From positions 62,001 to 126,000 of the IMG/VR virus record IMGVR_UViG_3300027782_000027: a DNA stretch of 64,000 nt; one strand, written 5' to 3'. The notes beneath the pieces are model-generated. The model worked only from the letters and a program-made list of their open reading frames with translations. It was not told the origin of the DNA and searched no databases. Made by a program: the position numbers and the translations under genes. Of this stretch, positions 9,212 through 55,052 are shown piece after piece; position 1 is the stretch's first letter, and each line of letters begins with the position of its first letter.

Positions 9212-9949
9212 ATGAAAAGTAATATGATTTTAGAAATTCTTAAAAAACTAACTGAATATGAGAAATATTTAAATGAAGCATCAACTACATCTACTGTTGG
9301 TGGTACATATAAGCCTCCGATTAGACCAGGAATTAGAAAATGGTTTGATGAAAATTTAAAGCCATTTATTGAACCTGTATCTGACTATGTTGATGCTGAA
9401 ATAAATTACGATTCTTTAGATGGTCATGTTAAAAAATCTAAAAAAGAAATTTCTAAAAAAGAAAAAAATGCTAAACATATTAGAGATAAGGATTATAGAC
9501 AAGATGCTCCTGATGAAGGTGATGATGAATATGCTTACGCACCATTTAAAATGTATAAACCAGATTATCAAGTGGATAGTGTAAATGAATCAAAAAAAGA
9601 TACTAATGAAGATTTAGGTGTTTGGTTTGGTACAAAGAAAAAACCAAAGGGTAGTAAACAACCTAAAGGTCCATGGGTAAATATTTGTAGTAAAAAAGAT
9701 GGTAAACATCCACCATGTGGAAGACCTGAGGGTGATACAAAGGGTTATCCTAAATGTAGAGCGGTAGGGGTCGCAGCTAAAATGACCGATTCTCAAAAAC
9801 AATCTGCTTGTCAACAAAAAAGAAAGGCCGAAAAAAAAGATACTCAAACAGGTAAAGGTCAAAAACCTGTTATGACATCATACAAACCTAAAAAGAAAAA
9901 GACCAACGAATCGGTCTTAATATCTTTAATTAGAAAATCTTTAGGTTAA
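9212..9949 (+). CDS. Basic late protein with Cys-rich C-terminal domain (W-V-x-I-C...PCGR...YPKC)
   Basis: ORF track; ATG 9212 preferred over TTG 9206. The motif is recalled from uncharacterised phage and large-virus proteins. Confidence 0.7.
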   Translation: MKSNMILEILKKLTEYEKYLNEASTTSTVGGTYKPPIRPGIRKWFDENLKPFIEPVSDYVDAEINYDSLDGHVKKSKKEISKKEKNAKHIRDKDYRQDAPDEGDDEYAYAPFKMYKPDYQVDSVNESKKDTNEDLGVWFGTKKKPKGSKQPKGPWVNICSKKDGKHPPCGRPEGDTKGYPKCRAVGVAAKMTDSQKQSACQQKRKAEKKDTQTGKGQKPVMTSYKPKKKKTNESVLISLIRKSLG

Positions 9950-10191
9950 TAAATACTTTTACTAACTCTAATACCTGGTCTAAGAGGTTCGTAAGCTCTT
10001 TCAGGTCTTGAGTATTGTCCTGTATTATATTCAGAATTTAATTCTCTCAATGCGTTTTTATATTCACCTGTTTCATCAGATAATATTCTATCAATAACAT
10101 CTTGAACTAAGCCTCTATCAAGTCTTCCGTATTCTGGTTCTTCTGACATTTCTTTTAATACTTTTTTAATTTGCGTATCTAATTTTGACAT
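9946..10191 (-). CDS. Hypothetical late protein (N-terminal IKKVLKE)
   Basis: 81-aa ORF with a late motif upstream at 10220-10226. Confidence 0.7.
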   Translation of the reverse strand: MSKLDTQIKKVLKEMSEEPEYGRLDRGLVQDVIDRILSDETGEYKNALRELNSEYNTGQYSRPERAYEPLRPGIRVSKSIY

Positions 10192-10201
10192 GATTCTAAT
10201 A

Positions 10202-10606
10202 TTAACAATTTATTTTATTATAAATATTGTCAAGAGAATGATTAATTTGACTTTCTAATTCTTTTTCAATTTCCATTGCTCTATATTCCATTTCTCTACG
10301 GAACGCACTAACCAATTTATCCCATTGAGTTTTATTTAATTTAATAAAATAACTGTATGTATGATTAGTTACAGTAACTTGTCCACCATCCATTGTAACA
10401 AAAATACCTAATTTATCATTACGGATATATTTCTTATCTGATATGGGTGCGATTATGAGTTCAGAATCTTCCGAATGAATGAGTTTACGACATATGGTGG
10501 AACATTTCCTCACGTTAGACATATAGATGTCAAATTCGGTATCCTTTCGGTCTAATCTACGTAAGTATAGACGATATTTAATCCACAGTTTTTTTATTAT
10601 AGTCAT
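10202..10606 (-). CDS. Hypothetical early protein
   Basis: 134-aa ORF preceded by a Bacteroidota-type promoter. Confidence 0.7.
   Translation of the reverse strand: MTIIKKLWIKYRLYLRRLDRKDTEFDIYMSNVRKCSTICRKLIHSEDSELIIAPISDKKYIRNDKLGIFVTMDGGQVTVTNHTYSYFIKLNKTQWDKLVSAFRREMEYRAMEIEKELESQINHSLDNIYNKINC
10220..10226 (-). promoter_or_regulatory. TATTTAT putative late promoter
   Basis: Lies in the 3' end of the 10202 ORF, upstream of the 10191 start. Confidence 0.5.
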
Positions 10607-10625
10607 GTCATTTATGATTTGACTA

Positions 10626-10656
10626 CAAATATACTACGATTTTTTAATAATCCAAA
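10626..10656 (-). promoter_or_regulatory. Bacteroidota housekeeping-type promoter TTTG-N19-TATATTTG
   Basis: -33 TTTG at 10656-10653, 19-nt spacer, -7 TAnnTTTG at 10633-10626, upstream of ATG 10606. Confidence 0.7.
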
Positions 10657-10664
10657 ATAATTGA

Positions 10665-11192
10665 TTAACAATATGCTCCTGAACAATGTTTTTTTCCATC
10701 AAGACCTTTGATTTTACCTTTACATACTTGAACAGCGTGACCATTTGAATAAGCGGAAGGGTAAACGTCATATTTTGATTTTGCAGATGCGACACCACGA
10801 GCACATAATTTAGTACCAGCCTTTTTACGACCTTCAGTCATTTGATATAATGCCAATGCTGTGCCAGGGTCTCCATTTACATCATCTACCATAGCTAAAT
10901 CGTCGATAATATTGTCATCTTCCATTACCTCTTCAGAACTAAAATCATCACCTTCAATTTCGTTCATTATAAAATCAAAAACTTGGTCCATATTATTTTT
11001 AGATTCTGCAATGTGGTCTTGAGCCCAATCATGACCATTGTCTAAAATAGATTCTATCATTTTTTTATCCTTACCAAGGAGTATTTCACATTGGCGTTTC
11101 ATTTGTTCTAAATTACTGAAGAACATATATCTTTGAGTTTCCTCTTTAAGTACTTTTTTAATTATGTTATTTAAATTTTTCATATTACGCAA
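10665..11192 (-). CDS. Late protein with C-terminal LCARG...YPSAY..G..VQVCKG domain (DUF5872-like)
   Basis: YDVYPSAYSNGHAVQVCKG motif; N-terminal IIKKVLKEE. Confidence 0.6.
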   Translation of the reverse strand: MRNMKNLNNIIKKVLKEETQRYMFFSNLEQMKRQCEILLGKDKKMIESILDNGHDWAQDHIAESKNNMDQVFDFIMNEIEGDDFSSEEVMEDDNIIDDLAMVDDVNGDPGTALALYQMTEGRKKAGTKLCARGVASAKSKYDVYPSAYSNGHAVQVCKGKIKGLDGKKHCSGAYC

Positions 11193-11703
11193 TCATATCA
11201 TCTTCTTTTAGGTCATTACAGACTACATCTAAAAACACTTCAATATCGTGTTCAATACCTTCATAATCCTCAAATACATTATTTCCTTCAGTTGTATTTT
11301 CAAACATACAAGTTTGAAAATTACCTTCAGTATCACAGTAAATTTCACCATAGTAATCACTATCATCAACTGTTAGATATCCTGTATGTATTTTTTCATC
11401 TTCAGTATCTTCAGTTGACTCGTATCTAAATTTAAATGACGGCATACCTGGAAATTCAAAAGACCAAAAACCACCAGCTTTAGTCATAAAATCATCTTTA
11501 GATGATGGTTCATCTTCTATTGAAATACCTTTAGTGAATTTCCCAAGAATTTCTCTTTCTTTAGGAGTAATTGATTCCATACCTGACTGACTAATCTTAT
11601 CTAAGATTGCGTCAATTTTATCTTCACCTGGTGTTAACGCTTCAGATAATACAAATTTTAATAACTTAATATATTCGTTTTCTTTTAATACTACTTTTTT
11701 CAT
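11185..11703 (-). CDS. Hypothetical acidic late protein
   Basis: 172-aa ORF overlapping its neighbours. Contains IDAILDKISQSGMESIT (DUF6576-like helix pair, tentative). Confidence 0.7.
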   Translation of the reverse strand: MKKVVLKENEYIKLLKFVLSEALTPGEDKIDAILDKISQSGMESITPKEREILGKFTKGISIEDEPSSKDDFMTKAGGFWSFEFPGMPSFKFRYESTEDTEDEKIHTGYLTVDDSDYYGEIYCDTEGNFQTCMFENTTEGNNVFEDYEGIEHDIEVFLDVVCNDLKEDDMIA

Positions 11704-13196
11704 TTCTTATTAACTATTTGGAATGTTAGTGTTTTTTTATAAGTATCTACTTCTCCTGATGTTAGTACTTTAATATCAACATTATATTCATTTGGTATTT
11801 TATCTTTTGTATCAAATATAAAATAGTATTCATTAGACGCTCTATTAATTTGAGTCCAGTCTTGAACTTGTACTTCAGTCGTTCCCTCGTTAACATATAT
11901 TCTATAATATGCGGTAACAGGTGTTAGTACTTCATTTGAAGTGTATGCTTTTTTAATAACCACACCAACTTTTCTAACATCAGTATTGAGTATTTTTTCA
12001 TCTTGTTTGATACCGTAAAAATCAAATCCAAATAACTCAGGGTCCCTACTTTGAATACCTAATGTAAAATAACCTTGATAAGGTAATACAGTTAAATCAT
12101 TAACTACATCAGGTAATGAAATGCCGTTATAAACTAAATTAGACCAAGTATCCGTAAACATACATGGGGTTGTTACAGTTATCCCACTTGTTGTTATTTG
12201 ATAAACACCTTGTGTTATTTGACAACCTGTGTATGTTCCAACAACATTACCCTGATTATTCTCAAGAGTAACAACAGGTAGATTATCTAAACTTGTTGGG
12301 ACCCCTCCGATATAAGAATATAAATAAAGACGATTATTGTTATGAGAATAAAATGAATTTCTATTATCTAATATTAAATCATTATATGAAGTTTCTAAAA
12401 AAGGTTCGTAAAATGTTTGAGTGTGTCTTGTAAAGAATCCAACTGAATAATTTTCAGTTAACCCTGTTAAATTTTCTAACTGAGGTAAATAAGCAATTCC
12501 CCATCCTGTAAATCCTGATGTCGAACCTGTAAGATACTGATTAATTTCATTTGTCATGTCAAATTCAATATCCTCATTACCAAATTCAAAGTGTTGTGTA
12601 TCAACGATGATTAAATCAGAATAATCAACATTACCTCCTGTTGTGTTATTGTATATTCCATTAGTACTCCAACCACTTAATGTTGTTCTTTGATACCAAT
12701 TTGAAGGTCTTTGTGAATATGATTTATCTTGGGGTAATGTAATTGGTGTTAATAATCCATTAGATGTATTAAGTGTATTTTGAACATCGTAATAGTCGTA
12801 TCCAACTCCCTCATCCCAACTTTGAGCCACCCCTGTACTACCTGAAGTTAATGGTATTCTAAATAAAATTAAATCAAATGAAGTGGCTCTTAATCTACCC
12901 TGAGATGTATATTCATTTGATAAACCTTCTTTATCAAATGAAGATGTATTTGTCATTCTCAAGGTATGTGTTATTCCTGAAAATCCAGTACATCCTGTAG
13001 ATATTGTTTTGGTTTGAATTTTCCCTACAAGTTGTGAAAGGTCTAAATCAAATATGAATCTGCTAAATCCTGGTGAAGCAATTACATCTGATGATGAACC
13101 AAAATAAAGTTGTGTCCACGGAGACTTACCAGTGTTAGTAAAACTGTTGGATAATAACGTATTATTACGACTAAAATATGAACGATGAATTGACAT
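11700..13196 (-). CDS. Putative virion structural protein (beta-rich)
   Basis: 498-aa T/S/G/N/Y-rich ORF with a late motif upstream. Confidence 0.7.
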   Translation of the reverse strand: MSIHRSYFSRNNTLLSNSFTNTGKSPWTQLYFGSSSDVIASPGFSRFIFDLDLSQLVGKIQTKTISTGCTGFSGITHTLRMTNTSSFDKEGLSNEYTSQGRLRATSFDLILFRIPLTSGSTGVAQSWDEGVGYDYYDVQNTLNTSNGLLTPITLPQDKSYSQRPSNWYQRTTLSGWSTNGIYNNTTGGNVDYSDLIIVDTQHFEFGNEDIEFDMTNEINQYLTGSTSGFTGWGIAYLPQLENLTGLTENYSVGFFTRHTQTFYEPFLETSYNDLILDNRNSFYSHNNNRLYLYSYIGGVPTSLDNLPVVTLENNQGNVVGTYTGCQITQGVYQITTSGITVTTPCMFTDTWSNLVYNGISLPDVVNDLTVLPYQGYFTLGIQSRDPELFGFDFYGIKQDEKILNTDVRKVGVVIKKAYTSNEVLTPVTAYYRIYVNEGTTEVQVQDWTQINRASNEYYFIFDTKDKIPNEYNVDIKVLTSGEVDTYKKTLTFQIVNKK

Positions 13197-13208: not shown

Positions 13209-13215
13209 ATAAATA
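13209..13215 (-). promoter_or_regulatory. TATTTAT putative late promoter
   Basis: In the gap upstream of the 13196 start. Confidence 0.65.
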
Positions 13216-17360: not shown

Positions 17361-18098
17361 TTACTCTTCCTTAACATCTATTAACGAAGAGTAAATTTTC
17401 TTGAATTTTTTAATTGAAGCTCTAATCTCTTTAGTTGACATATTTGTCATTTCACGAATAGATAATAAAATTACATTTTTATTAAATTTATTATTATCTG
17501 TTGCCGGAAATATCGTTTCGTAATTGTCTAAAATATCGATAAGTGCAAAACCTAATTTTAATTCATTATCATTTAATTCATCTTCTTCTATTGTTGTTTT
17601 AATATAATCTTTTAATATCGGAATTACATTATATTCTTGAATAGGTTCAATTTCTAAATAATAAATCATTTCAGGTCTATTTTCTAAATCACTTGAAATA
17701 TCCTCATATGAAATTTTTCTATTTGTTTCTTTTTGGTCTTTTAATATTTGGCCCATAAGATAATTCTTACAAATAGTTCCAAAATATGAGTAAGCTTTCT
17801 TTTCTTTTGAAGGACTAAATTTTTCAATTTTTGTCATCAAAAAAGAATGTGTGTCGGTATGAATTTCAGTAAAATTCATATCTTTTCTATACAATTTATA
17901 TCTTCTTATTATCGAAGATATCATCTTATCTAAAGGGAATCTTAAAAATTCATTATAAATTTTATTTTTTTCCTCAGAAGTAGATGCGGTTAGAAATAAT
18001 CTAACAGCATTTTCCTCTCTTATATCAAAATAATTTTCTGTGGCCGGTTTTTTCTTCTTAGTTAAAGAATCTTGAACAGACGTTGCACTTAAAATCAT
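17361..18098 (-). CDS. Phage sigma factor (T4 gp55-like late sigma, tentative)
   Basis: Sigma region-2-like segment IEKFSPSKEKKAYSYFGTICKNYL (compare gp55 F...AYFT.I..NAF). Confidence 0.6.
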   Translation of the reverse strand: MILSATSVQDSLTKKKKPATENYFDIREENAVRLFLTASTSEEKNKIYNEFLRFPLDKMISSIIRRYKLYRKDMNFTEIHTDTHSFLMTKIEKFSPSKEKKAYSYFGTICKNYLMGQILKDQKETNRKISYEDISSDLENRPEMIYYLEIEPIQEYNVIPILKDYIKTTIEEDELNDNELKLGFALIDILDNYETIFPATDNNKFNKNVILLSIREMTNMSTKEIRASIKKFKKIYSSLIDVKEE

Positions 18099-18916
18099 TA
18101 AACATTTTCAGGTGTATATTTTATGTTTCTGTCTTGGCTAAAGAAATATTCTTTTTTTGCAGTATTAACCCAAAACTTAACTTCATTTTCTGTTAACACA
18201 TTTTCGCCATTTTTATAATCCCAAAAAATAGAACCTTCTCTTAAATTCATATGTTTATAACCAATTCTTGGTATTGTCATGAATTTAACTGAGTTATAAG
18301 TCATTCTTAATAAAAACTCGTAAGCAAATGTTAGTTTAAACCCTGGTTTAAATCCTCCAAAATCTTCAACAATTTGTTTTTTAAATACCATACCTGAAGT
18401 TTGGAAATTTTGATAACTTAATAATGTTTCATTTGTTAATATTCCCATTTCTTGTGAGAAATTAGCAGCAAATGTCGCTTCGTTTGTAAATCCAGCAAAT
18501 ACTGATTTATTATCAACATCAACAACGATTGGCATAAATACATCTACATCAGTATAAATTTCTGAATATTTTCTAACATTTTTAAACCAAATTTTAGAAA
18601 ACTCATCGTCAAATTCTAAAATACTATTCCATTCAGTTTTTGAGTTTTTAATACCTGTATTAACTTGTTCGCAAAAACTAAGCTCACCGTCAAATTTAAT
18701 CTTATTAACTTTTAAATCACCAAAATCAAAATTGTTTAAATAATTAATTAAACTTTCTTCTTCAGAGTGAACAATTATAAGTTCGGTGGGTAATATATCT
18801 TGTATAGTTAATGACTCGATACTTTTTTTAAAAAACTCGTCAAAATCTCTAACTACTGAGGTTTTTAATGGTAATATAACACTTAATTCAAATTCTTTTT
18901 TCATATTATTGTTCAA
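18098..18916 (-). CDS. GT2-family glycosyltransferase
   Basis: LSVILPL...NTGIKNSKTEWNSILEFDDEF (GT-A fold, DD motif). Confidence 0.8.
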   Translation of the reverse strand: MNNNMKKEFELSVILPLKTSVVRDFDEFFKKSIESLTIQDILPTELIIVHSEEESLINYLNNFDFGDLKVNKIKFDGELSFCEQVNTGIKNSKTEWNSILEFDDEFSKIWFKNVRKYSEIYTDVDVFMPIVVDVDNKSVFAGFTNEATFAANFSQEMGILTNETLLSYQNFQTSGMVFKKQIVEDFGGFKPGFKLTFAYEFLLRMTYNSVKFMTIPRIGYKHMNLREGSIFWDYKNGENVLTENEVKFWVNTAKKEYFFSQDRNIKYTPENV

Positions 18917-19964
18917 TTAATTGTAATTTATTTATTTCTTCTTGAAATCCTTGAGTTCGTTTACTGAAGTAATCTGAAAATAATTCAATAACGTTCTTTT
19001 CAAATTTTTGAAAATCTGAAAACTCAGATGAAGTATCTAATCCATTTTGATATAATTTTTCAGATATATTATCTTCTAACCAATTTTGGATAAATTCGGC
19101 AACGAAATCAACTAATTTAATTTCTTCTTGAATCCAAATACCATTTTCTTCATTTAACCATGAGGGAACCATCTTAGGTAATACACCTAAAACAGGAACA
19201 TTAGATTTCATAGATTCCAATGGGAAAGTCCCAAAAGAACTTGTTTTATCAATCCAAACTGATAACATACAGTCCTTTAAAGTATTAGCAAATTCTTCTT
19301 CTGAAATTCCTCTCATGTCTCTAAATGTTACCCATCTAAATTGTGGATATTTTTGATAGAAAGTTTTAATCAGATTAATTGCCTCACGTTGTTCTCTTGA
19401 AGAGACTGCGATGATTGGTTTTGCCGGAAATTTAGATGTTGTAAATACAGGTGAAACAACAGGTTCTAATATATCAATTGAGAAGTTTCTCATAATATCC
19501 GAGATATATTTTTTCTGATTTTCAGAAGTTGTTATACATTTTGTAAATCCAAATTGACTCCATACTTGTCCTGGTTGTAAAGTTTCGAAAATATGGTCGT
19601 AAGCTTGTGATAAAACAACTTTAGTACAAGGTAAATTAGTTAATTGTGACATAATATACCCAAAAATTTCAGGAATAATAATGAAATCTTCAGGTGAAAT
19701 CCCTAAATTTTGACCTTCAACAGACTGATGAGGTAAATTAGAATATTTATCACCTAACCATCCTGAAACACCAAAATAATCTGGTTTTTCATGTAACATA
19801 ATCGGATTGTATCCGTTTTCTTTTAACGTTAATCCCATCTGGTAGATATATCTTACCGACGCATTAGCATTTCCCTTTGTGTCCTGAACAAAAAAATAAA
19901 TCTTTGATTTTTTATTTTTAAGGTTTTCAATAGAACCTTCAATTTTTAAAACTCTTTCTTCCAT
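18906..19964 (-). CDS. GT-B fold (GT4-like) glycosyltransferase
   Basis: IIIPE; SSFGTFPLESMKSNVPV (compare EgFGlp.lEAma.G.PV). Confidence 0.75.
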   Translation of the reverse strand: MEERVLKIEGSIENLKNKKSKIYFFVQDTKGNANASVRYIYQMGLTLKENGYNPIMLHEKPDYFGVSGWLGDKYSNLPHQSVEGQNLGISPEDFIIIPEIFGYIMSQLTNLPCTKVVLSQAYDHIFETLQPGQVWSQFGFTKCITTSENQKKYISDIMRNFSIDILEPVVSPVFTTSKFPAKPIIAVSSREQREAINLIKTFYQKYPQFRWVTFRDMRGISEEEFANTLKDCMLSVWIDKTSSFGTFPLESMKSNVPVLGVLPKMVPSWLNEENGIWIQEEIKLVDFVAEFIQNWLEDNISEKLYQNGLDTSSEFSDFQKFEKNVIELFSDYFSKRTQGFQEEINKLQLIEQ

Positions 19965-19967
19965 ATT

Positions 19968-21541: not shown

Positions 21542-21544
21542 TAT

Positions 21545-22369: not shown

Positions 22370-22371
22370 AA

Positions 22372-35704: not shown

Positions 35705-36286
35705 TTATTGGAGTTTTTTAACTTTAGATATTTTACCTTCAAATATATGTTTACCAACTTTGATTGTCATAATTTCATTAGATTTTTGAGTTGATTCAAC
35801 CATTAATCCATTTTCAGTTAATACCTCCTCAACAGTTTCTCTAACAATTTTTCTTATGTCATTAGCACTTAATCCAATACCACTATTTGAAGGTTGATGT
35901 TGAGGTTGTGGTTTGTTTTCTACAACAGTTTCTTTACGGGTGCCCATTAATCTTGACGCCTTTTCAATAATATCATCTGATATTGTTGCTTGATATTGTT
36001 GAGCTTGTTGAATTGGGTGTTCCATCATTAACCTTTTAATTGCGTCAGGTAATTTAGAATTTTTTATTCTATCTTCAGTTATTACTGCCGTAGATGCTTT
36101 TGGTGTTTGAGGAGATGAAGACAAATACTCTTCAGGTATGTTATAAGTTGACGGGATTGGAGTCTCATCATATTCTCTAACTAATTGTTGTTGATTTGAT
36201 TTTTTAGGTGTTACACCTCTATCCATATCATTATGTCTATCCATTATCTGTTTAGACACCATTAATTTCTGCATTAAATCATTCAT
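35705..36286 (-). CDS. Hypothetical late protein
   Basis: 193-aa ORF; contains IRKIVRETVEEVLTE. Confidence 0.75.
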   Translation of the reverse strand: MNDLMQKLMVSKQIMDRHNDMDRGVTPKKSNQQQLVREYDETPIPSTYNIPEEYLSSSPQTPKASTAVITEDRIKNSKLPDAIKRLMMEHPIQQAQQYQATISDDIIEKASRLMGTRKETVVENKPQPQHQPSNSGIGLSANDIRKIVRETVEEVLTENGLMVESTQKSNEIMTIKVGKHIFEGKISKVKKLQ

Positions 36287-36671
36287 TTTCTAATTCAAAT
36301 TTTGTACAAACTTTTAATCCTACCATTCCTTTATCATCAGGATTATAATTTGGTCTGATTACGTCAAATTTATCTCTAGGGTCTACTGAAAAGTTACCTA
36401 TTCTATCAATCCTAAATAATCTCCACCCCGGTAATGGTTGGTCACCAATTTGTGCGGTGTGAGACGCTCCTTCTCTTTCCCATGCTCTTATTACTTTATT
36501 TCCTCTTTTTGAGGTTCCGTAACAAAAAGGTTCAATTACACGAAGTCCTTTACCCCCATTATCTTTACCATTGTAGTAAATTGTAACCAAATTTCTATTT
36601 TTAATAGCATTGGTTATTTCATCGCTACTAGCTTCAAAAATAAGTTGTTTTATTACGTTGTAAAGCTTCAT
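36279..36671 (-). CDS. Stand-alone WYL-domain protein
   Basis: VTIYY...R.IEP...Y...IRAW...WRLFRIDRI motif. Confidence 0.8.
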   Translation of the reverse strand: MKLYNVIKQLIFEASSDEITNAIKNRNLVTIYYNGKDNGGKGLRVIEPFCYGTSKRGNKVIRAWEREGASHTAQIGDQPLPGWRLFRIDRIGNFSVDPRDKFDVIRPNYNPDDKGMVGLKVCTKFELENE

Positions 36672-45622: not shown

Positions 45623-47128
45623 TCAATTCACAGTATAAATTAAATCTTGTGTTGGGATTTTAAACATACTTGAACTAAAAGCGACAGTTTTGTTTTTAAA
45701 AATATAAACTTCTTTATTAATATTTGAGAAAATTAATAAGTCGGTATTAAACTTTTTGACAAAACCTTTAATTTTAATATTATAGAAACCGTCAATTACT
45801 TCCATACTTAAAATTGGTTTAACTTGAGCGTTTTGTATTTTGTTATCAAAATTCACTGTTAAATCAGTTCCCGCAAAATCTTCTTTTGAACCTAAACTAC
45901 CAACTACAACTGCAGTTCCTTCACCAAATTCTTGATTGATTTTTTTTGCGACATACTCCTCAAGTTGACCACCTTTGTCATGTGTTCTTTTTAAAAGTTT
46001 CATAATCTTATCAAGAGTTTTAGACCCTTTAAAAATTCTTTCACCAAAAAACTCCATATAAGAACAAAATTTATTTATTTCTTCTACTTGTTGTAAAGGT
46101 GTTACCCCAATAAAATTTAATGTGGGTTTATTTAGTTTCGTAAGGACTGCGTTTAAATCATCAACTAAAATCTTAAACCCAATATAATTTGTATTTAATT
46201 TATTAATTACTGAACGACCTGGTTGTTCTAAGTCGTAAATACCTGAAGATGAACCTTCGGAGTGTTGATTGTTTTCATGCCACTTATCAGACAAAACCGT
46301 TTTCAACGTATTATCAATACATCGTCTGTAAGTCCAAAGAACATTTTTGTTGTTACTAAAAATATCTGAGTAATCCGACACGTTTTCGTATAACAGTTTT
46401 TTTGGTGAAGTTGATTCGTTCAATTTTTTTTCAGTTTTTGATTTGTATAACTCATTAACAAATTCCCAGTTGATTACTTCCCAAAAATTTTCAATATATT
46501 CGTCTCTTTTGTTTTGGTATTTTAAATAATATGCGTGTTCCCATAAATCCAAACCTAACAACGGAAAACCACCTTGATTAATTATATTCATAAGTGGGTT
46601 GTCTTGATTTGAGGTGGACATTACTTTTAATCTACCTGTATCGGTTAGAACTAACCAACACCATCCTGAACCAAATCGTTTTTTTGATATTTCTTCAAAT
46701 TTAGTTTTGAAATTACGATACGTCCCAAATTGTTTAACAATTTTTTCAAACACTTCACCACTTGGTTTTTGCGGTGTGGGTGATAACATCTTCCAAAACA
46801 ATGCGTGGTTAAATGCTCCACCTGCGTTATTTCTTATTGTTGTATTATACTTTGATATCTGTTTAACAATATTCTCCAATTCAACATCACCATAATCTTT
46901 TTTACGAAGAGCTGAATTTAATTTTTTAACATACCCCTTGTAATGTTTTTGATAATGAAATTTCATTGTCTCAGGGTCAATAAATCTTCTTAACGATGCG
47001 TATCCATACGGTAGTTTATCAATACCAATGGTTTTCATTTCATTAATAAAAAATTTGGTTTCAGGTTGAGTTTCCTCACCTAACAAACGACTAACTAATG
47101 ACTCTGATACTATATTTAACGATTTCAT
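45623..47128 (-). CDS. Mn/Fe superoxide dismutase fused to a ~260-aa C-terminal domain
   Basis: LPYGY...FHYQKHY, NAGGAFNHALFW and GLDLWEHAYYLKYQN, with all four metal ligands present; long extra C-terminus. Confidence 0.9.
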   Translation of the reverse strand: MKSLNIVSESLVSRLLGEETQPETKFFINEMKTIGIDKLPYGYASLRRFIDPETMKFHYQKHYKGYVKKLNSALRKKDYGDVELENIVKQISKYNTTIRNNAGGAFNHALFWKMLSPTPQKPSGEVFEKIVKQFGTYRNFKTKFEEISKKRFGSGWCWLVLTDTGRLKVMSTSNQDNPLMNIINQGGFPLLGLDLWEHAYYLKYQNKRDEYIENFWEVINWEFVNELYKSKTEKKLNESTSPKKLLYENVSDYSDIFSNNKNVLWTYRRCIDNTLKTVLSDKWHENNQHSEGSSSGIYDLEQPGRSVINKLNTNYIGFKILVDDLNAVLTKLNKPTLNFIGVTPLQQVEEINKFCSYMEFFGERIFKGSKTLDKIMKLLKRTHDKGGQLEEYVAKKINQEFGEGTAVVVGSLGSKEDFAGTDLTVNFDNKIQNAQVKPILSMEVIDGFYNIKIKGFVKKFNTDLLIFSNINKEVYIFKNKTVAFSSSMFKIPTQDLIYTVN

Positions 47129-47133: not shown

Positions 47134-47140
47134 ATAAATA
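47134..47140 (-). promoter_or_regulatory. TATTTAT putative late promoter (SOD fusion)
   Basis: 5 nt upstream of the 47128 start. Confidence 0.6.
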
Positions 47141-47141: not shown

Positions 47142-48902
47142 TTACTTACTATTGATTTCGTTAAGTATTTGTTCAACAATATCTACAGAACTTTCGTCAA
47201 TATCACCCATAACCGTACCAATTATCTGTTTCTTCCTTGTAAGAATATCATAAATAACTCCTTCAATAGAGTTATCAAATAATGGATAGTATATTGAAAC
47301 TGAATTTTTTTGTCCATATCTATACGCTCGGTCTTCGGCTTGAGCATGTTCAGCGGGTACAAACGATAAGTCATTCATAATAACGGCCTCACCAGCGGTA
47401 AGTGTCAATCCAACCCCCGCAGCTTTCATGTTACCACAAAAAACTTGTATTTTATCACTCTCTTGGAACTTGTCAACCGCATCCTGTCTTGCGGGTTTTG
47501 ATGTTGACCCATCTAAATAAACAGACTTCTTACCAAAATGTTCGTGTATCTTTTTTAAAGGTTCAGTGAAGTTACTGAAGATAATAACTTTTTTACCCTG
47601 TTCAATAATGTTCTCAGCAAGTTCAATTGTTATAGATATTTTTTCTTCAGCAATTACCTGTCTTACTTTCATAAGTTTTGAAAACTGAACTGAGAGAGAC
47701 CTTGACTCATCTTGTCTATTATTATACCAATCATAATACTCACCCATCAACCCTTCATACAATCTTGATTTTAAACGAAGATAAACAGGTGTGATAATTT
47801 TTTCAGGTAAATCTAAAACTTCAGTCTTTAATCTTCTTAATATTTGACGTGAAGTTCTTTCTCTTAATTCTTCTAAATTAGATGCTCCTGTCACATTCCA
47901 AATCTTTTTACCACCAACTCTAAACTGATACCCACCACAATATCTAATTGCATATGCTTGCCAGTTTTGACTCACAGGACTATCAATAAGTTTTAAGATA
48001 TTATAATAATTCATGGGACGAGAAGTCATTGGTGTCCCCGTTAATAACCAAAGTTTTTTAATGTTTTTGGTTACATCCATTATAATCTTTGTTCTTTGAG
48101 CCTGAGCATTTGAAACATAATGGGCTTCATCAATAATAACCAAATCAAATTTTGAATTAAGAATTGTTGAACCATTTTTATCTTTTGGGTCGTGAAAGTT
48201 TTTCAGGATATCGTAATTTACAATTACGTAATCCGACAATTCAAACTTTTTACCTTCACAGATATAAACTGATTTGTCGGTATAGTTTTTAATTTCTCTT
48301 TCCCAATTTATTTTAAGAGATGCCGGACATATGATTAAAATTCTATTTGTACCGCTTTCTAATGAAGCAATCACCGCAGAAGTGGTCTTACCAAGTCCCA
48401 TGTCATCCGCCAAAATGAACTTATCGTTCTTTAATAATTTTTCTATCGCTTCTTTTTGATGAGCAAGTGGTGGTCGGTTTTCATATTTTGTATAATCAAC
48501 ATCAACCAAGTTTTCGGTGTATTGTTTAATAACCGCAGCTCTCGGTATCCAAAAATCATGGATAGTCTCTCCACTAAAAATTTTACCCCAAATGTGATAT
48601 GACTTATCTTTTTCAACTAAAATTTTTTCAACGTATATTTTATCAGGTTCCTTAATAAAAGGATTGTCAGCAACAAGTTTTTGTGAAAAGTATGAATCAA
48701 TCTCAACCCATTTTTTAGCAACTTTTGGAACTACTGAATTGTAGTCAATAACATAATCACATTGAGCTCTTGTTGGAAGATACTTTTTATTTGAATCAAT
48801 CTGTTTTTTTAATTTGAGGATATAGTTATTTGACCCCTGATAATTTTCAAGAATAGATATTGCTTGTTGTTCAATACTTAAATGTCCTGTAGAAGTTGTC
48901 AA
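47142..48902 (-). CDS. SNF2-family (SMARCAL1/HARP-like) helicase
   Basis: LADDMGLGKT, IIDEAH, LTGTP, GVGLTL and QAEDRAYRYGQ motifs; TTG start. Confidence 0.93.
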   Translation of the reverse strand: MTTSTGHLSIEQQAISILENYQGSNNYILKLKKQIDSNKKYLPTRAQCDYVIDYNSVVPKVAKKWVEIDSYFSQKLVADNPFIKEPDKIYVEKILVEKDKSYHIWGKIFSGETIHDFWIPRAAVIKQYTENLVDVDYTKYENRPPLAHQKEAIEKLLKNDKFILADDMGLGKTTSAVIASLESGTNRILIICPASLKINWEREIKNYTDKSVYICEGKKFELSDYVIVNYDILKNFHDPKDKNGSTILNSKFDLVIIDEAHYVSNAQAQRTKIIMDVTKNIKKLWLLTGTPMTSRPMNYYNILKLIDSPVSQNWQAYAIRYCGGYQFRVGGKKIWNVTGASNLEELRERTSRQILRRLKTEVLDLPEKIITPVYLRLKSRLYEGLMGEYYDWYNNRQDESRSLSVQFSKLMKVRQVIAEEKISITIELAENIIEQGKKVIIFSNFTEPLKKIHEHFGKKSVYLDGSTSKPARQDAVDKFQESDKIQVFCGNMKAAGVGLTLTAGEAVIMNDLSFVPAEHAQAEDRAYRYGQKNSVSIYYPLFDNSIEGVIYDILTRKKQIIGTVMGDIDESSVDIVEQILNEINSK

Positions 48903-49476: not shown

Positions 49477-49635
49477 ATGAAAATTATTATTTCTAAAAAA
49501 CAATTGAAAATGATTGTTAAATCAATAGAAGATGGTCGGGTAATTTGTGATTGTGGTTGGTCTTGGGACTTATCTGACGGAGGAAATGACCCATATATTT
49601 GTCATAAATGTGGTAATGATAATGAAGAAAAATAA
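49477..49635 (+). CDS. 52-aa zinc-finger protein (CDC...CHKC), not in the ORF track
   Basis: Translated by hand: MKIIISKKQLKMIVKSIEDGRVICDCGWSWDLSDGGNDPYICHKCGNDNEEK; TAATG-coupled to the next gene. Confidence 0.75.
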   Translation: MKIIISKKQLKMIVKSIEDGRVICDCGWSWDLSDGGNDPYICHKCGNDNEEK

Positions 49636-50687
49636 TGGCTTTACCAAAAATTAAAAAAACTTTACCTCTTACATACCCTCCTATTGGTTATGAAAGAAGA
49701 GAACAACTTCTTGAAGATATTAACAAGGATGGAACTTACTTGCCTAAGTCTATTTTACATGAAGATTTGGATAGGGGGTTTTTGGACTTTGTTAAAGATG
49801 ATTTAAAAACTGTTGTTGGGGGAAAGATTGTTAAGGTTGTAGATATATTAATGACAACTCAGAATTGGTCTCAATTTACACAGACTTGGGATTTTAATAA
49901 CATTGATAAAAATGTTCAACCACCAATTATTACAACAGTAAGAACTCCTGAAGTAAAATACGGGACATTACCATCATTAAGATATAACATACCAAATAGA
50001 AAACAATATTATTATGCTGCGGTTCCTACATGGGACGGACAAAGAAAAGGTATGGACATTTACACCATTCCACAACCTGTTCCTGTTGATATAAAATATT
50101 CAGTTAAAATTATCTGTAATAGAATGAGAGAATTAAATAAATTCAATCAGATTGTTATTGAAAAATTTGCATCTCGTCAGGCTTATACACAAATTAAAGG
50201 ACATTACATTCCAATAACACTTGACGAAATATCAGATGAGTCGGTTATGGATGTTGAAAAAAGAAGATATTATATACAATCGTATGCTTTCACTTTACAA
50301 GGGTTTTTAAGTGATGAAGAAGAATATGAAGTTAAACCTGCAATCAGTAGAAGTTTAATGTTAGTTGAAATAGACCGTAGAAAGAAAAAAGTTAAAAGAA
50401 AACAATACCCACCAAATCCTGACCAATATGTTTTTAATGCGAACTTTCCTATAGGTATGACTTCTTATACTCAAACATTTAATTATTCGGCCAATATTAA
50501 TATTAATGGTGATGTTAATATTAACACATATGAATTTTTAATTAATGGTTTGTATTATGGAAATGATATTACAACATTACCTGCCGGTATGATACAAATT
50601 AATACAAATGATATTTTAACTATTAATATTGTTAAAACAAATAACGCTCAATCATCGTCATTTAATTTAGTATCAACAATAGTTTAA
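49635..50687 (+). CDS. Tail terminator/completion protein (gp15-like)
   Basis: PQPVPVDIKYSV pattern; located between neck and sheath. Confidence 0.7.
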   Translation: MALPKIKKTLPLTYPPIGYERREQLLEDINKDGTYLPKSILHEDLDRGFLDFVKDDLKTVVGGKIVKVVDILMTTQNWSQFTQTWDFNNIDKNVQPPIITTVRTPEVKYGTLPSLRYNIPNRKQYYYAAVPTWDGQRKGMDIYTIPQPVPVDIKYSVKIICNRMRELNKFNQIVIEKFASRQAYTQIKGHYIPITLDEISDESVMDVEKRRYYIQSYAFTLQGFLSDEEEYEVKPAISRSLMLVEIDRRKKKVKRKQYPPNPDQYVFNANFPIGMTSYTQTFNYSANININGDVNINTYEFLINGLYYGNDITTLPAGMIQINTNDILTINIVKTNNAQSSSFNLVSTIV

Positions 50688-53900: not shown

Positions 53901-54169
53901 TGATTTCAGCAGTAGCCGTAAGATTATTGTTCGAACAAAACGACAACTTGGTAAGACAACAGTTCTTAGATTCTGTTAATCCAATCTTAGATGCAATTCG
54001 TAGAGACAGAGGTTTATATGACTTCAGAGTTACTGTTCAAAATACACCTGAAGACTTAGATGCTAACCAAATGGTAGGTAAGATTTACATCAAACCAACT
54101 AAAGCTCTTGAATTCATTGACATTGAGTTCTTAATCACTCCAACAGGAGCGTCGTTTGAAAACATCTAA
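50954..54169 (+). CDS. Tail sheath protein (gp18-like, 1071 aa)
   Basis: FVSPGVYTSERDLS, WFATAGYTRG, INPI, WGNKTL, RINVRRLL and IKPTKALEFI motifs. Confidence 0.95.
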   Translation: MATSNKVFVSPGVYTSERDLSFVSQSVGVTTLGIVGETLKGPAFEPIFISSYGEFETYFGGTLPEKFVNTQIPKYEAAYIAKSYLQQSNQLFVTRVLGLSGYDAGSSWSITTVANVDCNTVGLTGGTSYSFNFTGSTASTTSIQFTSAVPSVISGNTYYSNNYTALDGTNSSILSDLRNQISSILSSNSLSASSAYYFGPVSGTQVNANVVAGLTAATNVFDVDSISASTIDYCSSVNDTWFYANFVPPATGEAYYGNSFYSRIGSLSGTAFGTSGSFTGTVSGFYYGFSGLTYSGYNDLVIATLRSRGVTNYSSTQHGPDYQVTGTSNVQMVCTGSYSAVTQNPFATFVISGLSYDSTSFSFETSFTPSNANFITKVFGVENFAKDQTEVPLFTEERYSTLLSYGYNKGFIRGLNCSLTALPEARNNSVDSIAYYLERYQTPQSPWVVSELRGNLVYRLFRAITISDGNDANAEIKISIANISFNNGTFDLIVRDFFDTDSNPVVLEKFTNCSINPGENNYIAKKVGSSDGEFAIKSKFIMVEVNTEAPVDALPCGFEGFETRKYTGAKSPFQIYKTKYDYPGEVIYNPPFGTTSGADNSVQSSGDNIRRTYLGISSAVAFSSDSPGYDPDFFQYKGMPNPTTTTCTEANHVTWGLQTKGFHMDSGATSVTIANVYSNSGQTAFYVGAGAFSSEPTSQTSPYYFLYSRKFTFLVQGGFDGWDIYREYRTNADRYRLGNTGYKQGALAGCVPYTDATGWGAFKQITVGDNTVDYANTDYYAYLLGVQQFANPEVTNINVLVTPGIDYVNNGDLVEQVIDVVENDRADSIYICTSPDFNLLQPSTSMDNLIYPQEAVDNLENTNIDSNYTATYYPWVLTRDTVNNTQIYIPATAEATRNFALTDNIAFPWFATAGYTRGVVNAVRARKRLTQEDRDTLYKGRINPIATFNDVGTVIWGNKTLQIRESALDRINVRRLLLQARKLISAVAVRLLFEQNDNLVRQQFLDSVNPILDAIRRDRGLYDFRVTVQNTPEDLDANQMVGKIYIKPTKALEFIDIEFLITPTGASFENI

Positions 54170-54187
54170 TCAACGATAAAATAATTG

Positions 54188-54214
54188 AAAACCCTCACGA
54201 AAGTGGGGGTTTTT
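54188..54214 (+). terminator. Rho-independent terminator
   Basis: ACCCTCAC-GAAA-GTGGGGGT followed by a T-tract. Confidence 0.8.
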
Positions 54215-54225
54215 ATTTTACATAA

Positions 54226-54232
54226 TATTTAT
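54226..54232 (+). promoter_or_regulatory. TATTTAT putative late promoter
   Basis: 4 nt before ATG 54237. Confidence 0.6.
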
Positions 54233-54236
54233 AGAT

Positions 54237-55052
54237 ATGAAAATATTTTTAGTAGAAGAATTTGATGAAGAAATCACACCCGATTTAAAATATTACGCTT
54301 TTGACTGGGACGATAATATTCTTACAATGCCGACACAAATAATACTTCGTACAGAGGATAATGAAGAAGTTGGTATGTCAACTGAAGACTTTGCGGAATA
54401 TCGTGTTAAGGTTGGAGTTGAACCTTTTGAATATAAGAAAAAAACTGTTGTAGGGTTTGCTGACGACCCGTTTAGGAACTTTGGGACTAAAGGCGATAAA
54501 AGATTCATCATTGACTCTATGATGGCAAAACCAGGTCCTGCATGGGATGATTTTGAAGAAGCAATTAATGGGGGTTCTATTTTTTCAATAGTTACTGCAA
54601 GGGGACACTCACCATTGGCTTTACGTAGGGCAATTGAAAATATGATTGAAACTAATTTTAAGGGAATATCTAAAAAAGAATTGGTTAAAAATTTAAGAAA
54701 ATTTAGAAAGTTTGCGGGTGAAGAGGATATGAAGGATAAAGAACTTATAAATGCTTATATGGATATGAATAAGTATTATCCTGTAACATTCGGAGCCGGG
54801 TCAGCACAAAGTCCTGAGGTTGGTAAAGTCGCAGCTTTAAAAGAATTTCAACAATATGTAAAATATTTAGCTGGTAGATTAAATAAACCAATAATGTTTA
54901 AAGATGATATTAGTAATAGATTCATACCTAAAATAGGATTTTCAGATGATGATTTAAGAAATCTGGAAAAAGTTAAAGATGAATTATCTAAAGACCCAGA
55001 AAATATTATTCAAACAATATCAACACATGGAGGAGAAAAGAAATTATACTAA
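54237..55052 (+). CDS. HAD-like phosphatase-fold protein
   Basis: YYAFDWDDNIL (DxD), IVTARGH and IGFSDDD (HAD motifs I, II and IV). Confidence 0.65.
   Translation: MKIFLVEEFDEEITPDLKYYAFDWDDNILTMPTQIILRTEDNEEVGMSTEDFAEYRVKVGVEPFEYKKKTVVGFADDPFRNFGTKGDKRFIIDSMMAKPGPAWDDFEEAINGGSIFSIVTARGHSPLALRRAIENMIETNFKGISKKELVKNLRKFRKFAGEEDMKDKELINAYMDMNKYYPVTFGAGSAQSPEVGKVAALKEFQQYVKYLAGRLNKPIMFKDDISNRFIPKIGFSDDDLRNLEKVKDELSKDPENIIQTISTHGGEKKLY

What the first reader, a model, noticed from the sequence alone, without database searches (positions are those of the whole stretch)
9212..54260. Shared N-terminal basic-helix plus [ILV]-x-E signal on many late non-structural proteins: a candidate head-packaging cargo system
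Seen: IKKVLKE|M (10191), IIKKVLKE|E (11192), KKVVLKE...FVLSE|A (11703), ILKKLTE...YLNE|A (9212), VIKQLIFE|A (WYL, 36671), IKTLVE|N (3051), SRLLGE|E...FINE|M (SOD), MKIFLVE|E (HAD, 54237) and MKIIISKKQLKMIVKSIE (49477). The capsid protein has ALLE|S and LINE|A, and the scaffold has LIE|S. All lie in operons carrying the late motif. Established: T4 gp21 cleaves after [IL]-x-E and removes capsid-targeting leaders from internal proteins. Inference: a modular leader loads enzymes (SOD, WYL, phosphatase, Cys-rich proteins) into the head for ejection into the host.
Basis: partly seen in the sequence, partly recalled or inferred. Interest (0 to 1): 0.72.

Follow-up and report, generated by a model that had tools for sequence, protein, structure and literature searches.

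The report
Shared leader peptide on phage proteins
An uncultured freshwater jumbo phage with a T4-type head puts the same short, removable-looking N-terminal helix ending in hydrophobic-x-Glu on about 35 otherwise unrelated small proteins. This is most likely a tag that loads them into the head and is then cut off, but nobody has yet looked inside the virion.

Summary
All cited coordinates are correct, but the bare [ILV]-x-E motif means nothing here. It occurs in 35% of any 30-residue stretch of this proteome. Behind it lies a real leader system. Three related leader types (A, 22 aa; B, about 10 aa; C, 14 aa, the second half of A) head 35 ORFs of the 240.8-kb genome. All start at the initiator Met, and they score 17-50 bits against a decoy ceiling of about 5. 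Their bodies are unrelated. The gene after the capsid gene belongs by its orthologues. SOD, the HAD-like protein, WYL and the zinc-ribbon protein are suggestive. The 3051 protein fails. Most of the system lies outside the window.

The capsid-targeting reading is the best explanation (about 0.5). The phage has a T4 gp21-type protease with an intact triad. Every A and C leader ends in [VIL]-x-E, where conservation stops abruptly. Synonymous changes show selection on the peptide. Orthologues swap leaders but keep the terminal Glu. The capsid protein's likely maturation site has the same junction. No virion data exist, the bodies are mostly acidic, and the fold test gave no answer. A leader profile finds 7,249 protein clusters worldwide, and no paper mentions the motif.

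The parts
4499..5218 (+). Prohead protease of the T4 gp21 family (MEROPS S77), 239 aa. His96, Ser160 and Asp185 are invariant in 41 orthologues.
   Evidence: Pfam PF03420 E 1.9e-26; PHROG head maturation protease; aligns to T4 gp21 structure 5jbl, E 8.5e-18; invariant columns.
6978..8867 (+). Major capsid protein of the gp23 family, 629 aa.
   Evidence: Pfam PF07068 E 2.8e-72; PHROG major head protein.
6978..7157 (+). N-terminal 60 aa of the capsid protein, ending L-I-N-E before Ala. This is the probable propeptide (delta domain).
   Evidence: L-I-N-E is invariant in 80 orthologues. The next 8-9 residues (Ala, then Ser/Thr/Asp/Gly) are hypervariable, and then the sequence is conserved again. 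That this mirrors the T4 gp23 propeptide site is inference from established knowledge (PMC5694885).
5557..6951 (+). Acidic scaffold-like protein, 464 aa, pI 4.3. The last 21 residues follow an invariant N-L-I-E|S site (C-terminal helix at 6886-6948).
   Evidence: Position between protease and capsid gene; pI; C-terminal conservation in 70 orthologues. There is no family hit, so the scaffold role is inferred.
9212..9949 (+). Basic 245-aa protein (pI 9.5) encoded directly after the capsid gene. Residues 1-22 (9212-9277) form a leader ending Y-L-N-E|A-S-T. The C-terminus carries a second, degenerate leader-like helix.
   Evidence: About 50 orthologues have variable N-terminal helices, several of them the canonical C leader. 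All end [ILV]-x-E before Ala-Thr/Ser-Ser, the same junction as in the capsid protein. Own TATTTAT at 9180-9186.
9946..10191 (-). 81-aa protein with a C-type leader (residues 1-14, nt 10150-10191).
   Evidence: HMM C 23.4 bits; conserved in 5 orthologues; TATTTAT at 10220-10226.
10665..11183 (-). 172-aa protein with a C-type leader (residues 1-14, nt 11142-11183).
   Evidence: HMM C 18.9 bits. In 29 orthologues the leader is either the short C type or the full 22-aa A type, the terminal Glu is invariant, and the body is conserved after a 3-7-residue variable linker.
11185..11703 (-). 172-aa protein with an A-type leader (residues 1-21, nt 11641-11703). Its start overlaps the stop of the upstream 498-aa gene.
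   Evidence: HMM A 31.8 bits; orthologues carry varied A leaders on the same body.
45623..47128 (-). Fe/Mn superoxide dismutase with a 30-aa N-terminal extension (47039-47128) and a 270-aa C-terminal part of unknown function. Possible leader.
   Evidence: Pfam Sod_Fe_N/C start at residue 36. All orthologues down to 48% identity keep a variable extension ending in an invariant [FL]-[IL]-x-E. The next residue is Met or Ala, so the internal Met is not an alternative start. TATTTAT at 47134-47140. Leader HMM score in this genome is at noise level.
54237..55052 (+). Residues 1-7 (54237-54257) end L-V-E. Possible truncated leader.
   Evidence: 59 distinct orthologue N-termini vary in length. Many read I-K-K-I-I-K-E or similar. 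The junction [LIV]-x-E before Gly/Glu is invariant. 20% exceed the 95th percentile of background for HMM C. No Pfam or PHROG hit.
36279..36671 (-). 130-aa protein with a marginal WYL match. Residues 1-13 (36633-36671) end L-I-F-E|A-S. Possible leader.
   Evidence: WYL E 3.2e-4, 21.1 bits, just under the cut-off. Orthologues read I-L-K-K-V-I-V-E|A-S-T. 38% exceed the background 95th percentile.
49477..49635 (+). 52-aa zinc-ribbon-like protein. Residues 1-18 (49477-49530) are a degenerate A/B-type leader.
Evidence: Linked to the leader component by short-query BLAST but scores 1.9 bits by HMM. A 57%-identical orthologue has a recognisable A/B leader.
3051..3761 (+). 236-aa helical basic protein between portal and protease, a candidate prohead core protein. 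It is not a leader-bearing protein.
   Evidence: No leader HMM hit at the N-terminus. In most of 39 orthologues the residue two before the Glu is Lys or Ser. [ILV]-x-E is enriched along the whole protein, 13 against 6.4 expected, z 3.0. That would suit a core protein that is cut into pieces (inference).
13209..13215 (-). Example of the phage promoter-like motif TATTTAT, 19 nt before the 498-aa gene that heads the operon with two leader genes.
   Evidence: Motif positions and distances. The host-type TTG-N17-21-TAnnTTTG precedes only 8 genes, none of them a leader gene.

Best explanation
The leader is a capsid-targeting propeptide of the T4 kind, much expanded.

Proposed sequence of events:
1. 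Leader-bearing proteins are made from the same phage-specific promoter class as head and tail genes.
2. The amphipathic basic helix (residues 10-22 of type A, which equals type C) docks the protein into the assembling scaffold/core or onto the inner face of the capsid protein.
3. The gp21-type serine protease (window 4499-5218) cuts after the Glu of [VIL]-x-E at the end of the leader, and perhaps also after the L-T-E at residues 7-9. At the same time it removes the capsid protein's 60-residue propeptide and degrades the scaffold.
4. The mature bodies stay in the head with the DNA and enter the host at infection.

Shown: the protease and its triad; the leader families and their strict N-terminal position; the sharp conservation boundary at the Glu; selection on the peptide; leader exchange on a conserved body; and the shared junction with the capsid protein.

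Inferred: docking, cleavage, presence in virions, ejection, and what the bodies do. Nearly all bodies are ORFans. By analogy with T4 internal proteins they could be anti-defence or host-takeover effectors.
For: 1. Protease: S77 family with His96/Ser160/Asp185 invariant in 41 orthologues.
2. Leader ends: all 12 A and all 6 C leaders end in [VIL]-x-E, and 14 of 16 B leaders have I-x-E at residues 5-7.
3. Peptide-level selection: A-leader codons 2-22 differ synonymously at 5.1 and non-synonymously at 6.6 codons per pair. Codons 23-30 differ at 0.4 and 7.2 of 8. The peptide is selected and the selection ends at Glu22.
4. Unrelated bodies: 28 of 30 bodies are singletons by BLAST, with almost no Pfam or PHROG hits.
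5. Leader exchange: orthologues of window gene 10665-11183 carry leaders of 11-22 aa of C or A type, with the terminal Glu invariant in 29 sequences.
6. Shared junction: the gene after the capsid gene has, across about 50 orthologues, variable leaders ending [ILV]-x-E before Ala-Thr/Ser-Ser-(Asp)-Ser-Gly. This is the same junction as the invariant L-I-N-E|Ala site of the capsid protein.
7. Helix character: residues 10-22 have a helical hydrophobic moment of 0.70, against a proteome median of 0.23 and a 95th percentile of 0.50.
8. Promoters: 23 of 36 leader genes have the TATTTAT element also found before portal, protease, scaffold, sheath, tube and baseplate genes. None has the host-type promoter.
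9. Worldwide: 7,249 cluster representatives match the A profile. In 97 aligned ones the only invariant columns are Glu9 and Glu22.
10. Precedent: T4 internal proteins share only a 10-20-residue CTS that gp21 removes (PMC3012670, PMC5694885).
Against: - No virion proteome, N-terminal mapping or isolate exists for this phage.
- [ILV]-x-E is frequent by chance, so its presence at leader ends is weak on its own.
- Leader bodies are mostly acidic (median pI about 5), unlike the basic T4 internal proteins.
- Thirty-five or more different cargoes is many.
- Most leader genes sit in arrays of small genes on both strands in the left arm, which looks like a hyperplastic host-takeover region.
- TATTTAT also precedes a helicase-like gene, so late timing is not shown.
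- The residue after the Glu varies widely.
- A second, internal leader copy occurs in 34 of 146 top database hits, and a leader-like helix sits at the C-terminus of the 9212 protein's orthologues. The element is therefore not strictly an N-terminal signal.
- The protease-leader co-fold gave no answer.
- No sequence similarity to any GenBank phage, T4 included.
Confidence: 0.5

Rival explanations
1. The leader is a common protein-protein interaction handle (an amphipathic helix) on a hypervariable set of intracellular host-takeover or anti-defence proteins. It binds one shared phage or host partner in the infected cell. It is neither cleaved nor packaged.
For: Most leader genes lie in dense arrays of small ORFan genes on both strands at genome 2.5-38.5 kb. 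Bodies are acidic. The helix also occurs internally and at C-termini. The modular, selected, exchangeable leader fits this reading equally well.
Against: It does not explain why conservation ends exactly at a Glu two residues after a hydrophobic residue. It does not explain why that Glu is the invariant column, or why the junction matches the capsid protein's probable maturation site in a head-module gene. None of the leader genes has the host-type early promoter.
Confidence: 0.25
2. The leader addresses proteins to the tail or baseplate (spike, tube lumen) rather than the head, for delivery with the tail tip.
For: The three clear window members lie in one operon behind a 541-aa gene. That gene's nearest feature clusters include Phage_base_V spike proteins (score 0.91, a lead only). 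The operon also holds a 498-aa gene with CBM96-like relatives. The HAD-like gene lies between the sheath and tube genes.
Against: The spike assignment is only a lead, with no Pfam or PHROG hit. The strongest comparative link is to the capsid protein and the gene next to it. No precedent is known to me for a cleavable leader in tail loading.
Confidence: 0.1
3. The shared gene starts are DNA-level recombination or expression cassettes (promoter plus the first codons) that spread by gene shuffling, like the promoter-stem-loop cassettes of T4-type hyperplastic regions. The peptide itself has no function.
For: Paralogues share upstream sequence as well. Palindromic divergent TATTTAT promoters recur between B and C genes at genome 3.8, 5.6 and 9.2 kb.
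Against: Synonymous differences are abundant inside the leader while the amino acids are kept (5.1 synonymous codon differences per pair). The leader persists in 7,249 clusters at 50% identity or less.
Confidence: 0.05
4. The resemblance is compositional chance: Lys/Ile/Glu-rich N-terminal helices in an AT-rich genome.
For: The bare motif is present in 35% of all 30-aa stretches and 55% of N-termini. The SOD, WYL, HAD-like, 3051 and 49477 N-termini score as noise against the leader HMMs in this genome.
Against: Leader HMM scores are 17-50 bits against at most 5.3 on the reversed proteome. All 35 hits sit at the initiator Met. E-values reach 1e-16 against 1.84 billion proteins.
Confidence: 0.03

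Closest known systems
T4 capsid targeting sequence (CTS) of internal proteins IPI, IPII, IPIII and Alt, removed by the gp21 prohead protease
   Same: A gp21-family protease and a gp23-family capsid protein. A short N-terminal leader is the only thing shared by otherwise unrelated proteins. The leader ends in hydrophobic-x-Glu. Cargo genes are hypervariable between related phages (PMC3012670, PMC5694885).
   Different: No sequence similarity to the T4 CTS. About 35 leader genes per genome against a handful in T4. There are three nested leader types, with two candidate cut sites in the long one. Bodies are mostly acidic rather than basic. Internal and C-terminal copies exist. The host is apparently a Bacteroidota bacterium in fresh water. 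Function is unproven here.
Propeptides of head and ejection proteins in phiKZ-like giant phages (phiKZ, 201phi2-1, SPN3US)
   Same: Many head-internal proteins are processed by a prohead protease after x-Glu. Paralogues share conserved N-termini. Propeptides often have several cut sites (PMC5694885).
   Different: Those phages use an S80-family protease, the motif Ser/Ala/Gly-x-Glu, and propeptides often longer than 100 residues. Here the protease matches S77 and the leaders are 10-22 residues long.
Encapsulin cargo-loading peptides and scaffolding-protein coat-binding helices
   Same: A short terminal peptide or helix on a flexible linker that docks cargo to the inside of an HK97-fold shell. 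It can sit at either terminus. The phage's own scaffold ends in a conserved basic amphipathic helix after an L-I-E|S site.
   Different: This is an analogy of mechanism only. There is no sequence relation, encapsulin peptides are not cleaved, and no binding was shown here.

Membership tests
T4-type CTS / gp21-processed head cargo | Genome encodes a gp21-family (S77) prohead serine protease with a catalytic His-Ser-Asp triad | tested here: met
   PF03420 E 1.9e-26; alignment to 5jbl; H96, S160 and D185 invariant in 41 orthologues.
T4-type CTS / gp21-processed head cargo | A short (10-20 aa) N-terminal leader shared by proteins that are otherwise unrelated | tested here: met
   35 ORFs in three leader types, all at the initiator Met; bodies unrelated.
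T4-type CTS / gp21-processed head cargo | Leader ends in the protease motif Leu/Ile(/Val)-x-Glu | tested here: met
   18 of 18 A and C leaders and 14 of 16 B leaders. The terminal Glu is invariant in orthologues and in 97 database representatives. Caveat: the motif is common by chance.
T4-type CTS / gp21-processed head cargo | Leader is removed and the mature protein is present inside the capsid | not testable with these tools
   No isolate and no virion proteome. The protease-leader co-fold gave no answer.
T4-type CTS / gp21-processed head cargo | Sequence homology of the leader to the T4 CTS | tested here: not met
   tblastn of a 25-aa leader and of a whole leader protein against 50,697 GenBank phage records found nothing, even at E up to 10.
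T4-type CTS / gp21-processed head cargo | Cargo are small basic DNA-associated proteins | tested here: not met
   Median body pI is 4.9-5.3 for the three types. Only the 9212 protein (pI 9.5, C-half 10.0) fits.
T4-type CTS / gp21-processed head cargo | Expression together with head genes (late) | tested here: inconclusive
   Leader genes share TATTTAT with head and tail genes, and none has a host-type promoter. The motif also precedes a helicase-like gene. Metatranscriptome contigs were uninformative.
phiKZ-like giant-phage propeptides | S80-family protease, Ser/Ala/Gly-x-Glu sites, propeptides often longer than 100 aa | tested here: not met
   The protease matches S77. P3 is Val/Ile/Leu. Leaders are 10-22 aa.
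Sec / lipoprotein signal peptides | Hydrophobic core of 10 or more residues after a short basic N-region | tested here: not met
   The leader is charged and amphipathic. Genuine signal peptides occur on other genes of this genome, for example at genome 34832 and 36259.

The most novel reading that the evidence does not exclude
A very large clade of uncultured freshwater jumbo phages uses one portable 22-residue tag, with two invariant glutamates as protease sites, to load dozens of hypervariable ORFan effectors per genome into the virion. More than 7,000 protein clusters worldwide carry the tag, some as leader-body-leader-body polyproteins. The tag would then be a sequence-only marker for injected phage proteins, a class that is otherwise almost invisible in metagenomes.
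Probability: 0.4. Interest if true: 0.85.

Novelty: new variant of a known kind. Interest (0 to 1): 0.68.

Why it matters
Proteins that a phage carries in its head and injects with its DNA act before any phage gene is expressed. In T4 they defeat host restriction. They are hard to find because they share no fold.

If this leader is a targeting propeptide, a 22-residue profile picks out thousands of candidate injected effectors in lake metagenomes. It would also show that the T4 cargo system reaches Bacteroidota phages in a much enlarged form, and it would offer a short tag for loading foreign proteins into such capsids.

If the leader is not a packaging signal, it is still an undescribed, strongly selected, exchangeable module found on more than 7,000 protein clusters, and its partner is unknown.

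Tried and rejected
- Bare [ILV]-x-E statistics: not discriminating.
- Leader HMMs built from this genome alone were too narrow to judge SOD, WYL and the HAD-like protein. An iterated HMM on 1,490 related N-termini did not widen. A rank test on orthologue N-termini was suggestive, but orthologues are not independent, and one control gene (49635-50687) also had 22% of its orthologue N-termini above the background 95th percentile, though its maximum was only 5.4 bits.
- Co-fold of protease with residues 1-45 of the 11185-11703 protein: no answer, score 0.00. This is not evidence either way.
- AlphaFold2 model of the 10665-11183 protein: pTM 0.34, with the leader a low-confidence helix. It was not good enough for a fold search.
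- tblastn against GenBank phages: no match.
- Paper searches for the motif strings, the genome size and Bacteroidota phage virion proteomes: nothing relevant.
- Metatranscriptome contigs laid on 6000-11900: heavy cover of the capsid gene from many related phages and almost none on the variable leader genes. Contigs show presence only, so this is uninformative.
- Pfam, PHROG and Atlas searches for the genes upstream of the leader operon gave only weak leads.
- Density of [ILV]-x-E in the scaffold: not above its composition (z 0.9).

Full report
**Context.** The window is bases 62001-126000 of a single 240,759-bp contig with 32% G+C. It carries a T4-like head module: portal (1192-3027), a gp21-family S77 prohead protease (4499-5218), an acidic scaffold-like protein (5557-6951) and a gp23-family capsid protein (6978-8867). 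It also carries tail sheath, tail tube and baseplate-hub genes, a family-B DNA polymerase (41309-44089) and a helicase (47142-48902). An 18-kb cluster of sugar-nucleotide and glycosyltransferase genes is present as well. The nearest GenBank phages share only about 42% capsid-protein identity (Flavobacterium phage immuto, Microcystis phage Mel-JY01). IMG/VR holds about 600 contigs with capsid proteins at 72-99% identity. The public runs that contain the sequence are labelled freshwater or lake-water metagenomes. Genes lack Shine-Dalgarno sites, and a few are preceded by TTG-N17-21-TAnnTTTG. This points to a Bacteroidota host, which is an inference from established knowledge of Bacteroidota promoters.

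**Check of the observation.** The motif as defined is not informative. [ILV]-x-E occurs in 35% of all internal 30-residue stretches and in 55% of N-termini of my 258 gene calls. The window (49%) is no richer than the right arm (47%).

The fuller pattern is real. Short-query BLAST of all N-terminal 35-mers gives one connected component of 36 proteins, and every other component has 2-3 members. It resolves into three leader types:
- Type A is 22 residues, with consensus M-K-K-x-V-R-L-T-E-S-D-L-x-x-I-V-K-R-V-I-x-E.
- Type B is about 10 residues, M-K-Y-L/I-I-T-E-S-Q/K-L.
- Type C is 14 residues, M-x-L-x-x-x-I-K-K/R-V/I-L-K/R-E-E. It equals the second half of A, with cross-scores of 6-12 bits.

Profile scores of members are 17-50 bits, while the best score on the reversed proteome is 5.3 bits. 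A six-frame scan of the genome finds 12 A, 16 B (a 17th hit above threshold is a weak cross-match of an A-type member) and 6 C (plus one internal cross-match to the second half of an A leader). Every one starts at a Met lying 1-18 codons after the upstream stop. None is internal or in a non-coding frame. After residue 30 the proteins are unrelated: 28 of 30 are BLAST singletons. Only one of 35 has a Pfam hit and three have PHROG hits of unknown function.

**The nine candidates.** Three are unambiguous members: 9946-10191 (C), 10665-11183 (C) and 11185-11703 (A). The second more likely starts at the ATG at 11183 than at the TTG at 11192.

The 245-aa basic protein encoded right after the capsid gene (9212-9949) scores as noise in this genome. 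Its roughly 50 orthologues, however, carry N-terminal helices of varying length. Several are the canonical C leader, and all end in [ILV]-x-E followed by Ala-Thr/Ser-Ser.

SOD: every orthologue down to 48% identity keeps a variable extension of about 30 residues before the SOD fold, ending in an invariant [FL]-[IL]-x-E. The following residue is Met or Ala, so the internal Met is not the true start. The promoter-like motif lies 12 nt before the long start.

The 'HAD' protein has no family match. Its orthologue N-termini vary, many contain I-K-K-I-I-K-E-like strings, and the [LIV]-x-E junction is invariant. WYL is only a marginal Pfam match. Its orthologues read I-L-K-K-V-I-V-E before Ala-Ser-Thr.

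The 52-aa zinc-ribbon protein at 49477 has a distant orthologue with a recognisable A/B leader.

The 3051 protein fails: most orthologues have Lys or Ser at the P3 position.

In a rank test, 15-38% of orthologue N-termini of SOD, HAD-like, WYL and the 9212 gene exceed the 95th percentile of background for the C profile. The figure is 0% for portal, protease, scaffold, the 4012 gene and the 3051 gene. One further control, 49635-50687, reached 22%, with a maximum of only 5.4 bits. Orthologues are not independent, so I treat this as suggestive only.

**Anatomy that bears on mechanism.**
- Protease. It aligns to the T4 gp21 structure 5jbl (E 8.5e-18). His96, Ser160 and Asp185 are invariant in 41 orthologues.
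- Capsid protein. The first 60 residues are almost invariant in 80 orthologues and end in L-I-N-E. The next 8-9 residues are hypervariable and rich in Ala/Ser/Thr/Asp/Gly, and then conservation resumes. This is the layout expected of a propeptide, cut site and flexible mature N-terminus, as in T4 gp23, whose 65-residue propeptide gp21 removes (PMC5694885).
- Shared junction. The 9212 family has the same junction, Glu then Ala-Thr-Ser-Asp-Ser-Gly.
- Leader ends. All A and C leaders end in [VIL]-x-E.
- Peptide-level selection. In nine gap-free A leaders, codons 2-22 differ per pair at 5.1 codons synonymously and 6.6 non-synonymously. Codons 23-30 differ at 0.4 and 7.2 of 8. The peptide is under purifying selection, and that selection ends exactly at Glu22.
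- Leader exchange. In 29 orthologues of 10665-11183 the leader is 11-22 residues long and of type C or A. The terminal Glu is invariant, a 3-7-residue variable linker follows, and the body is then highly conserved.
- Helix character. Residues 10-22 of type A form a strongly amphipathic helix, with hydrophobic moment 0.70 against a proteome 95th percentile of 0.50.
- Scaffold. It ends in a conserved basic amphipathic helix directly after an invariant N-L-I-E|Ser site.
- C-terminal copy. Orthologues of the 9212 protein also end in a leader-like helix.

**Expression signals.** TATTTAT lies 11-25 nt before the ATG of 80 of 258 genes. These include portal, the 3051 gene, protease, scaffold, the 9212 gene, sheath, tube, later tail and baseplate genes, SOD, the HAD-like gene and 23 of 36 leader genes. 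A host-type Bacteroidota promoter precedes only 8 genes, none of them a leader gene. Leader genes therefore belong to the phage-specific promoter class used by structural genes. That class also includes a helicase-like gene outside the window at genome 136439, so late timing is not established. Metatranscriptome contigs covered the capsid gene heavily and the variable leader genes hardly at all, which says nothing either way.

**Spread.** One leader protein finds 326 metagenomic relatives that share the leader on several bodies. A profile of the 12 A leaders, searched against 1.84 billion cluster representatives, finds 7,249 proteins at E of 0.001 or better and 159 at 1e-10 or better. In the best 146, all carry an N-terminal copy. 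Thirty-four carry a second, internal copy without a preceding Met, giving leader-body-leader-body. Similar fusions occur next to the capsid gene in relatives, at L022:4349-5950 and L071:6089-6919. In an alignment of 97 representatives the only invariant columns are Glu9 and Glu22. Leu7 and Ile20, the residues two before each Glu, are nearly invariant. This is partly expected, because top profile hits were chosen. Ninety-two of the 97 have no Pfam domain. No paper in the library contains the motif strings.

**Interpretation.** The best-supported model is a T4-type capsid-targeting propeptide system. [quoted passage not shown] That sequence is 10-20 residues long, gp21 removes it, and it is portable to foreign proteins (PMC5694885). 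Every sequence-level feature of that system is met here except homology of the leader itself and the basic character of the cargo.

I put the model at about 0.5 for four reasons:
- The decisive facts (presence in virions, cleavage) cannot be tested with these tools.
- The motif is common by chance.
- Most leader genes lie in a left-arm array that looks like a host-takeover region.
- Internal and C-terminal copies show the element is a helix module rather than a strict N-terminal signal.

The last point is compatible with a docking helix plus cut site, and would even suit polyprotein processing.

The main rival (0.25) is a common interaction handle on intracellular effectors that are never packaged. 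Smaller rivals are tail or baseplate loading (0.1; the three clear window genes follow a possible spike gene), a DNA-level cassette (0.05; argued against) and chance (0.03; excluded for types A, B and C).

**Verdict.** This is a new, much expanded variant of a known kind of system. It is centred outside the window and undescribed in the searched literature, and the sequence information given here makes it directly testable.

Noticed in passing
window 17361-35616 (- strand): An 18-kb run of sugar-nucleotide and glycosyltransferase genes inside a phage. It includes GDP-mannose 4,6-dehydratase (25586-26557), NAD epimerases, RmlD-like and RmlC-like genes, UDP-GlcNAc 2-epimerase (30452-31510) and several glycosyltransferases. 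A PolB-type exonuclease-like gene (33707-34405) is embedded in it. A second glycosyltransferase-looking cluster (judged from N-terminal sequences only, not tested) lies outside the window at genome 162-167 kb and 211-222 kb.
   Followed up: partly
genome 2.5-9.7 kb (L001:3800-3860, 5600-5650, 9160-9210): Repeated divergent gene pairs: a B-leader gene on the minus strand and a C-leader gene on the plus strand. They are separated by a palindromic spacer of about 32 nt holding two back-to-back TATTTAT motifs. It looks like a duplicated bidirectional promoter cassette.
   Followed up: partly
L022:4349-5950 (+), L071:6089-6919 (+) and database proteins P0121-P0150: Long ORFs in which the leader sits between two unrelated bodies without a Met in front (leader-body-leader-body). 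They could be polyproteins, gene fusions or gene-calling artefacts. 34 of the 146 best database hits are of this kind.
   Followed up: partly
window 4499-4560 (+): The protease's own N-terminus has an invariant G-K-G-I-L-I-E motif at residues 13-19 in 41 orthologues. It could be an autoprocessing site of the same hydrophobic-x-Glu kind.
   Followed up: no
window 7270-8000 (+): The capsid protein is 629 aa. The Pfam Gp23 model matches mainly residues 344-616. Residues about 100-340 are rich in Gly/Ser/Thr/Asn/Pro and look like an inserted domain absent from T4 gp23.
   Followed up: no
window 5557-6951 (+), residues about 160-200: The scaffold-like protein contains an exact tandem duplication of an acidic 14-residue unit (T-E-E-M-V-Y-E-I-E-M-D-S core) within a long Asp/Glu-rich tract.
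   Followed up: no
genome 18669, 20895, 25643, 28908, 34130, 41038, 42914 (outside the window; L001-L003): Further shared N-termini that are not types A, B or C. Examples are M-R-N-I-E-x-Y-x-x-R-F and proteins with E-K-Q-R-I-L-x-M-H or R-V-K-E-I-M-G-L near the start. There may be more leader classes than the three modelled.
   Followed up: no
genome 58728-60026 (just left of the window) and L042:817-2142: A 432-aa protein near the terminase-like and portal genes starts with a helix ending R-I-N-E|A-P. Its orthologue in a relative carries an A-like leader segment before the same junction. This may be another head-module leader protein.
   Followed up: no
genome 168785-183085 and 192.6-194.0 kb (outside the window): A single 4,766-aa ORF, and nearby short ORFs made almost entirely of Val-Gly repeats.
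   Followed up: no
genome 200848-202199 (outside the window): A gene pair behind a host-type TTG/TAnnTTTG promoter. The second product (266 aa) looks sigma-factor-like from its N-terminal sequence. It could be the factor that reads the TATTTAT promoters. Not tested.
   Followed up: no
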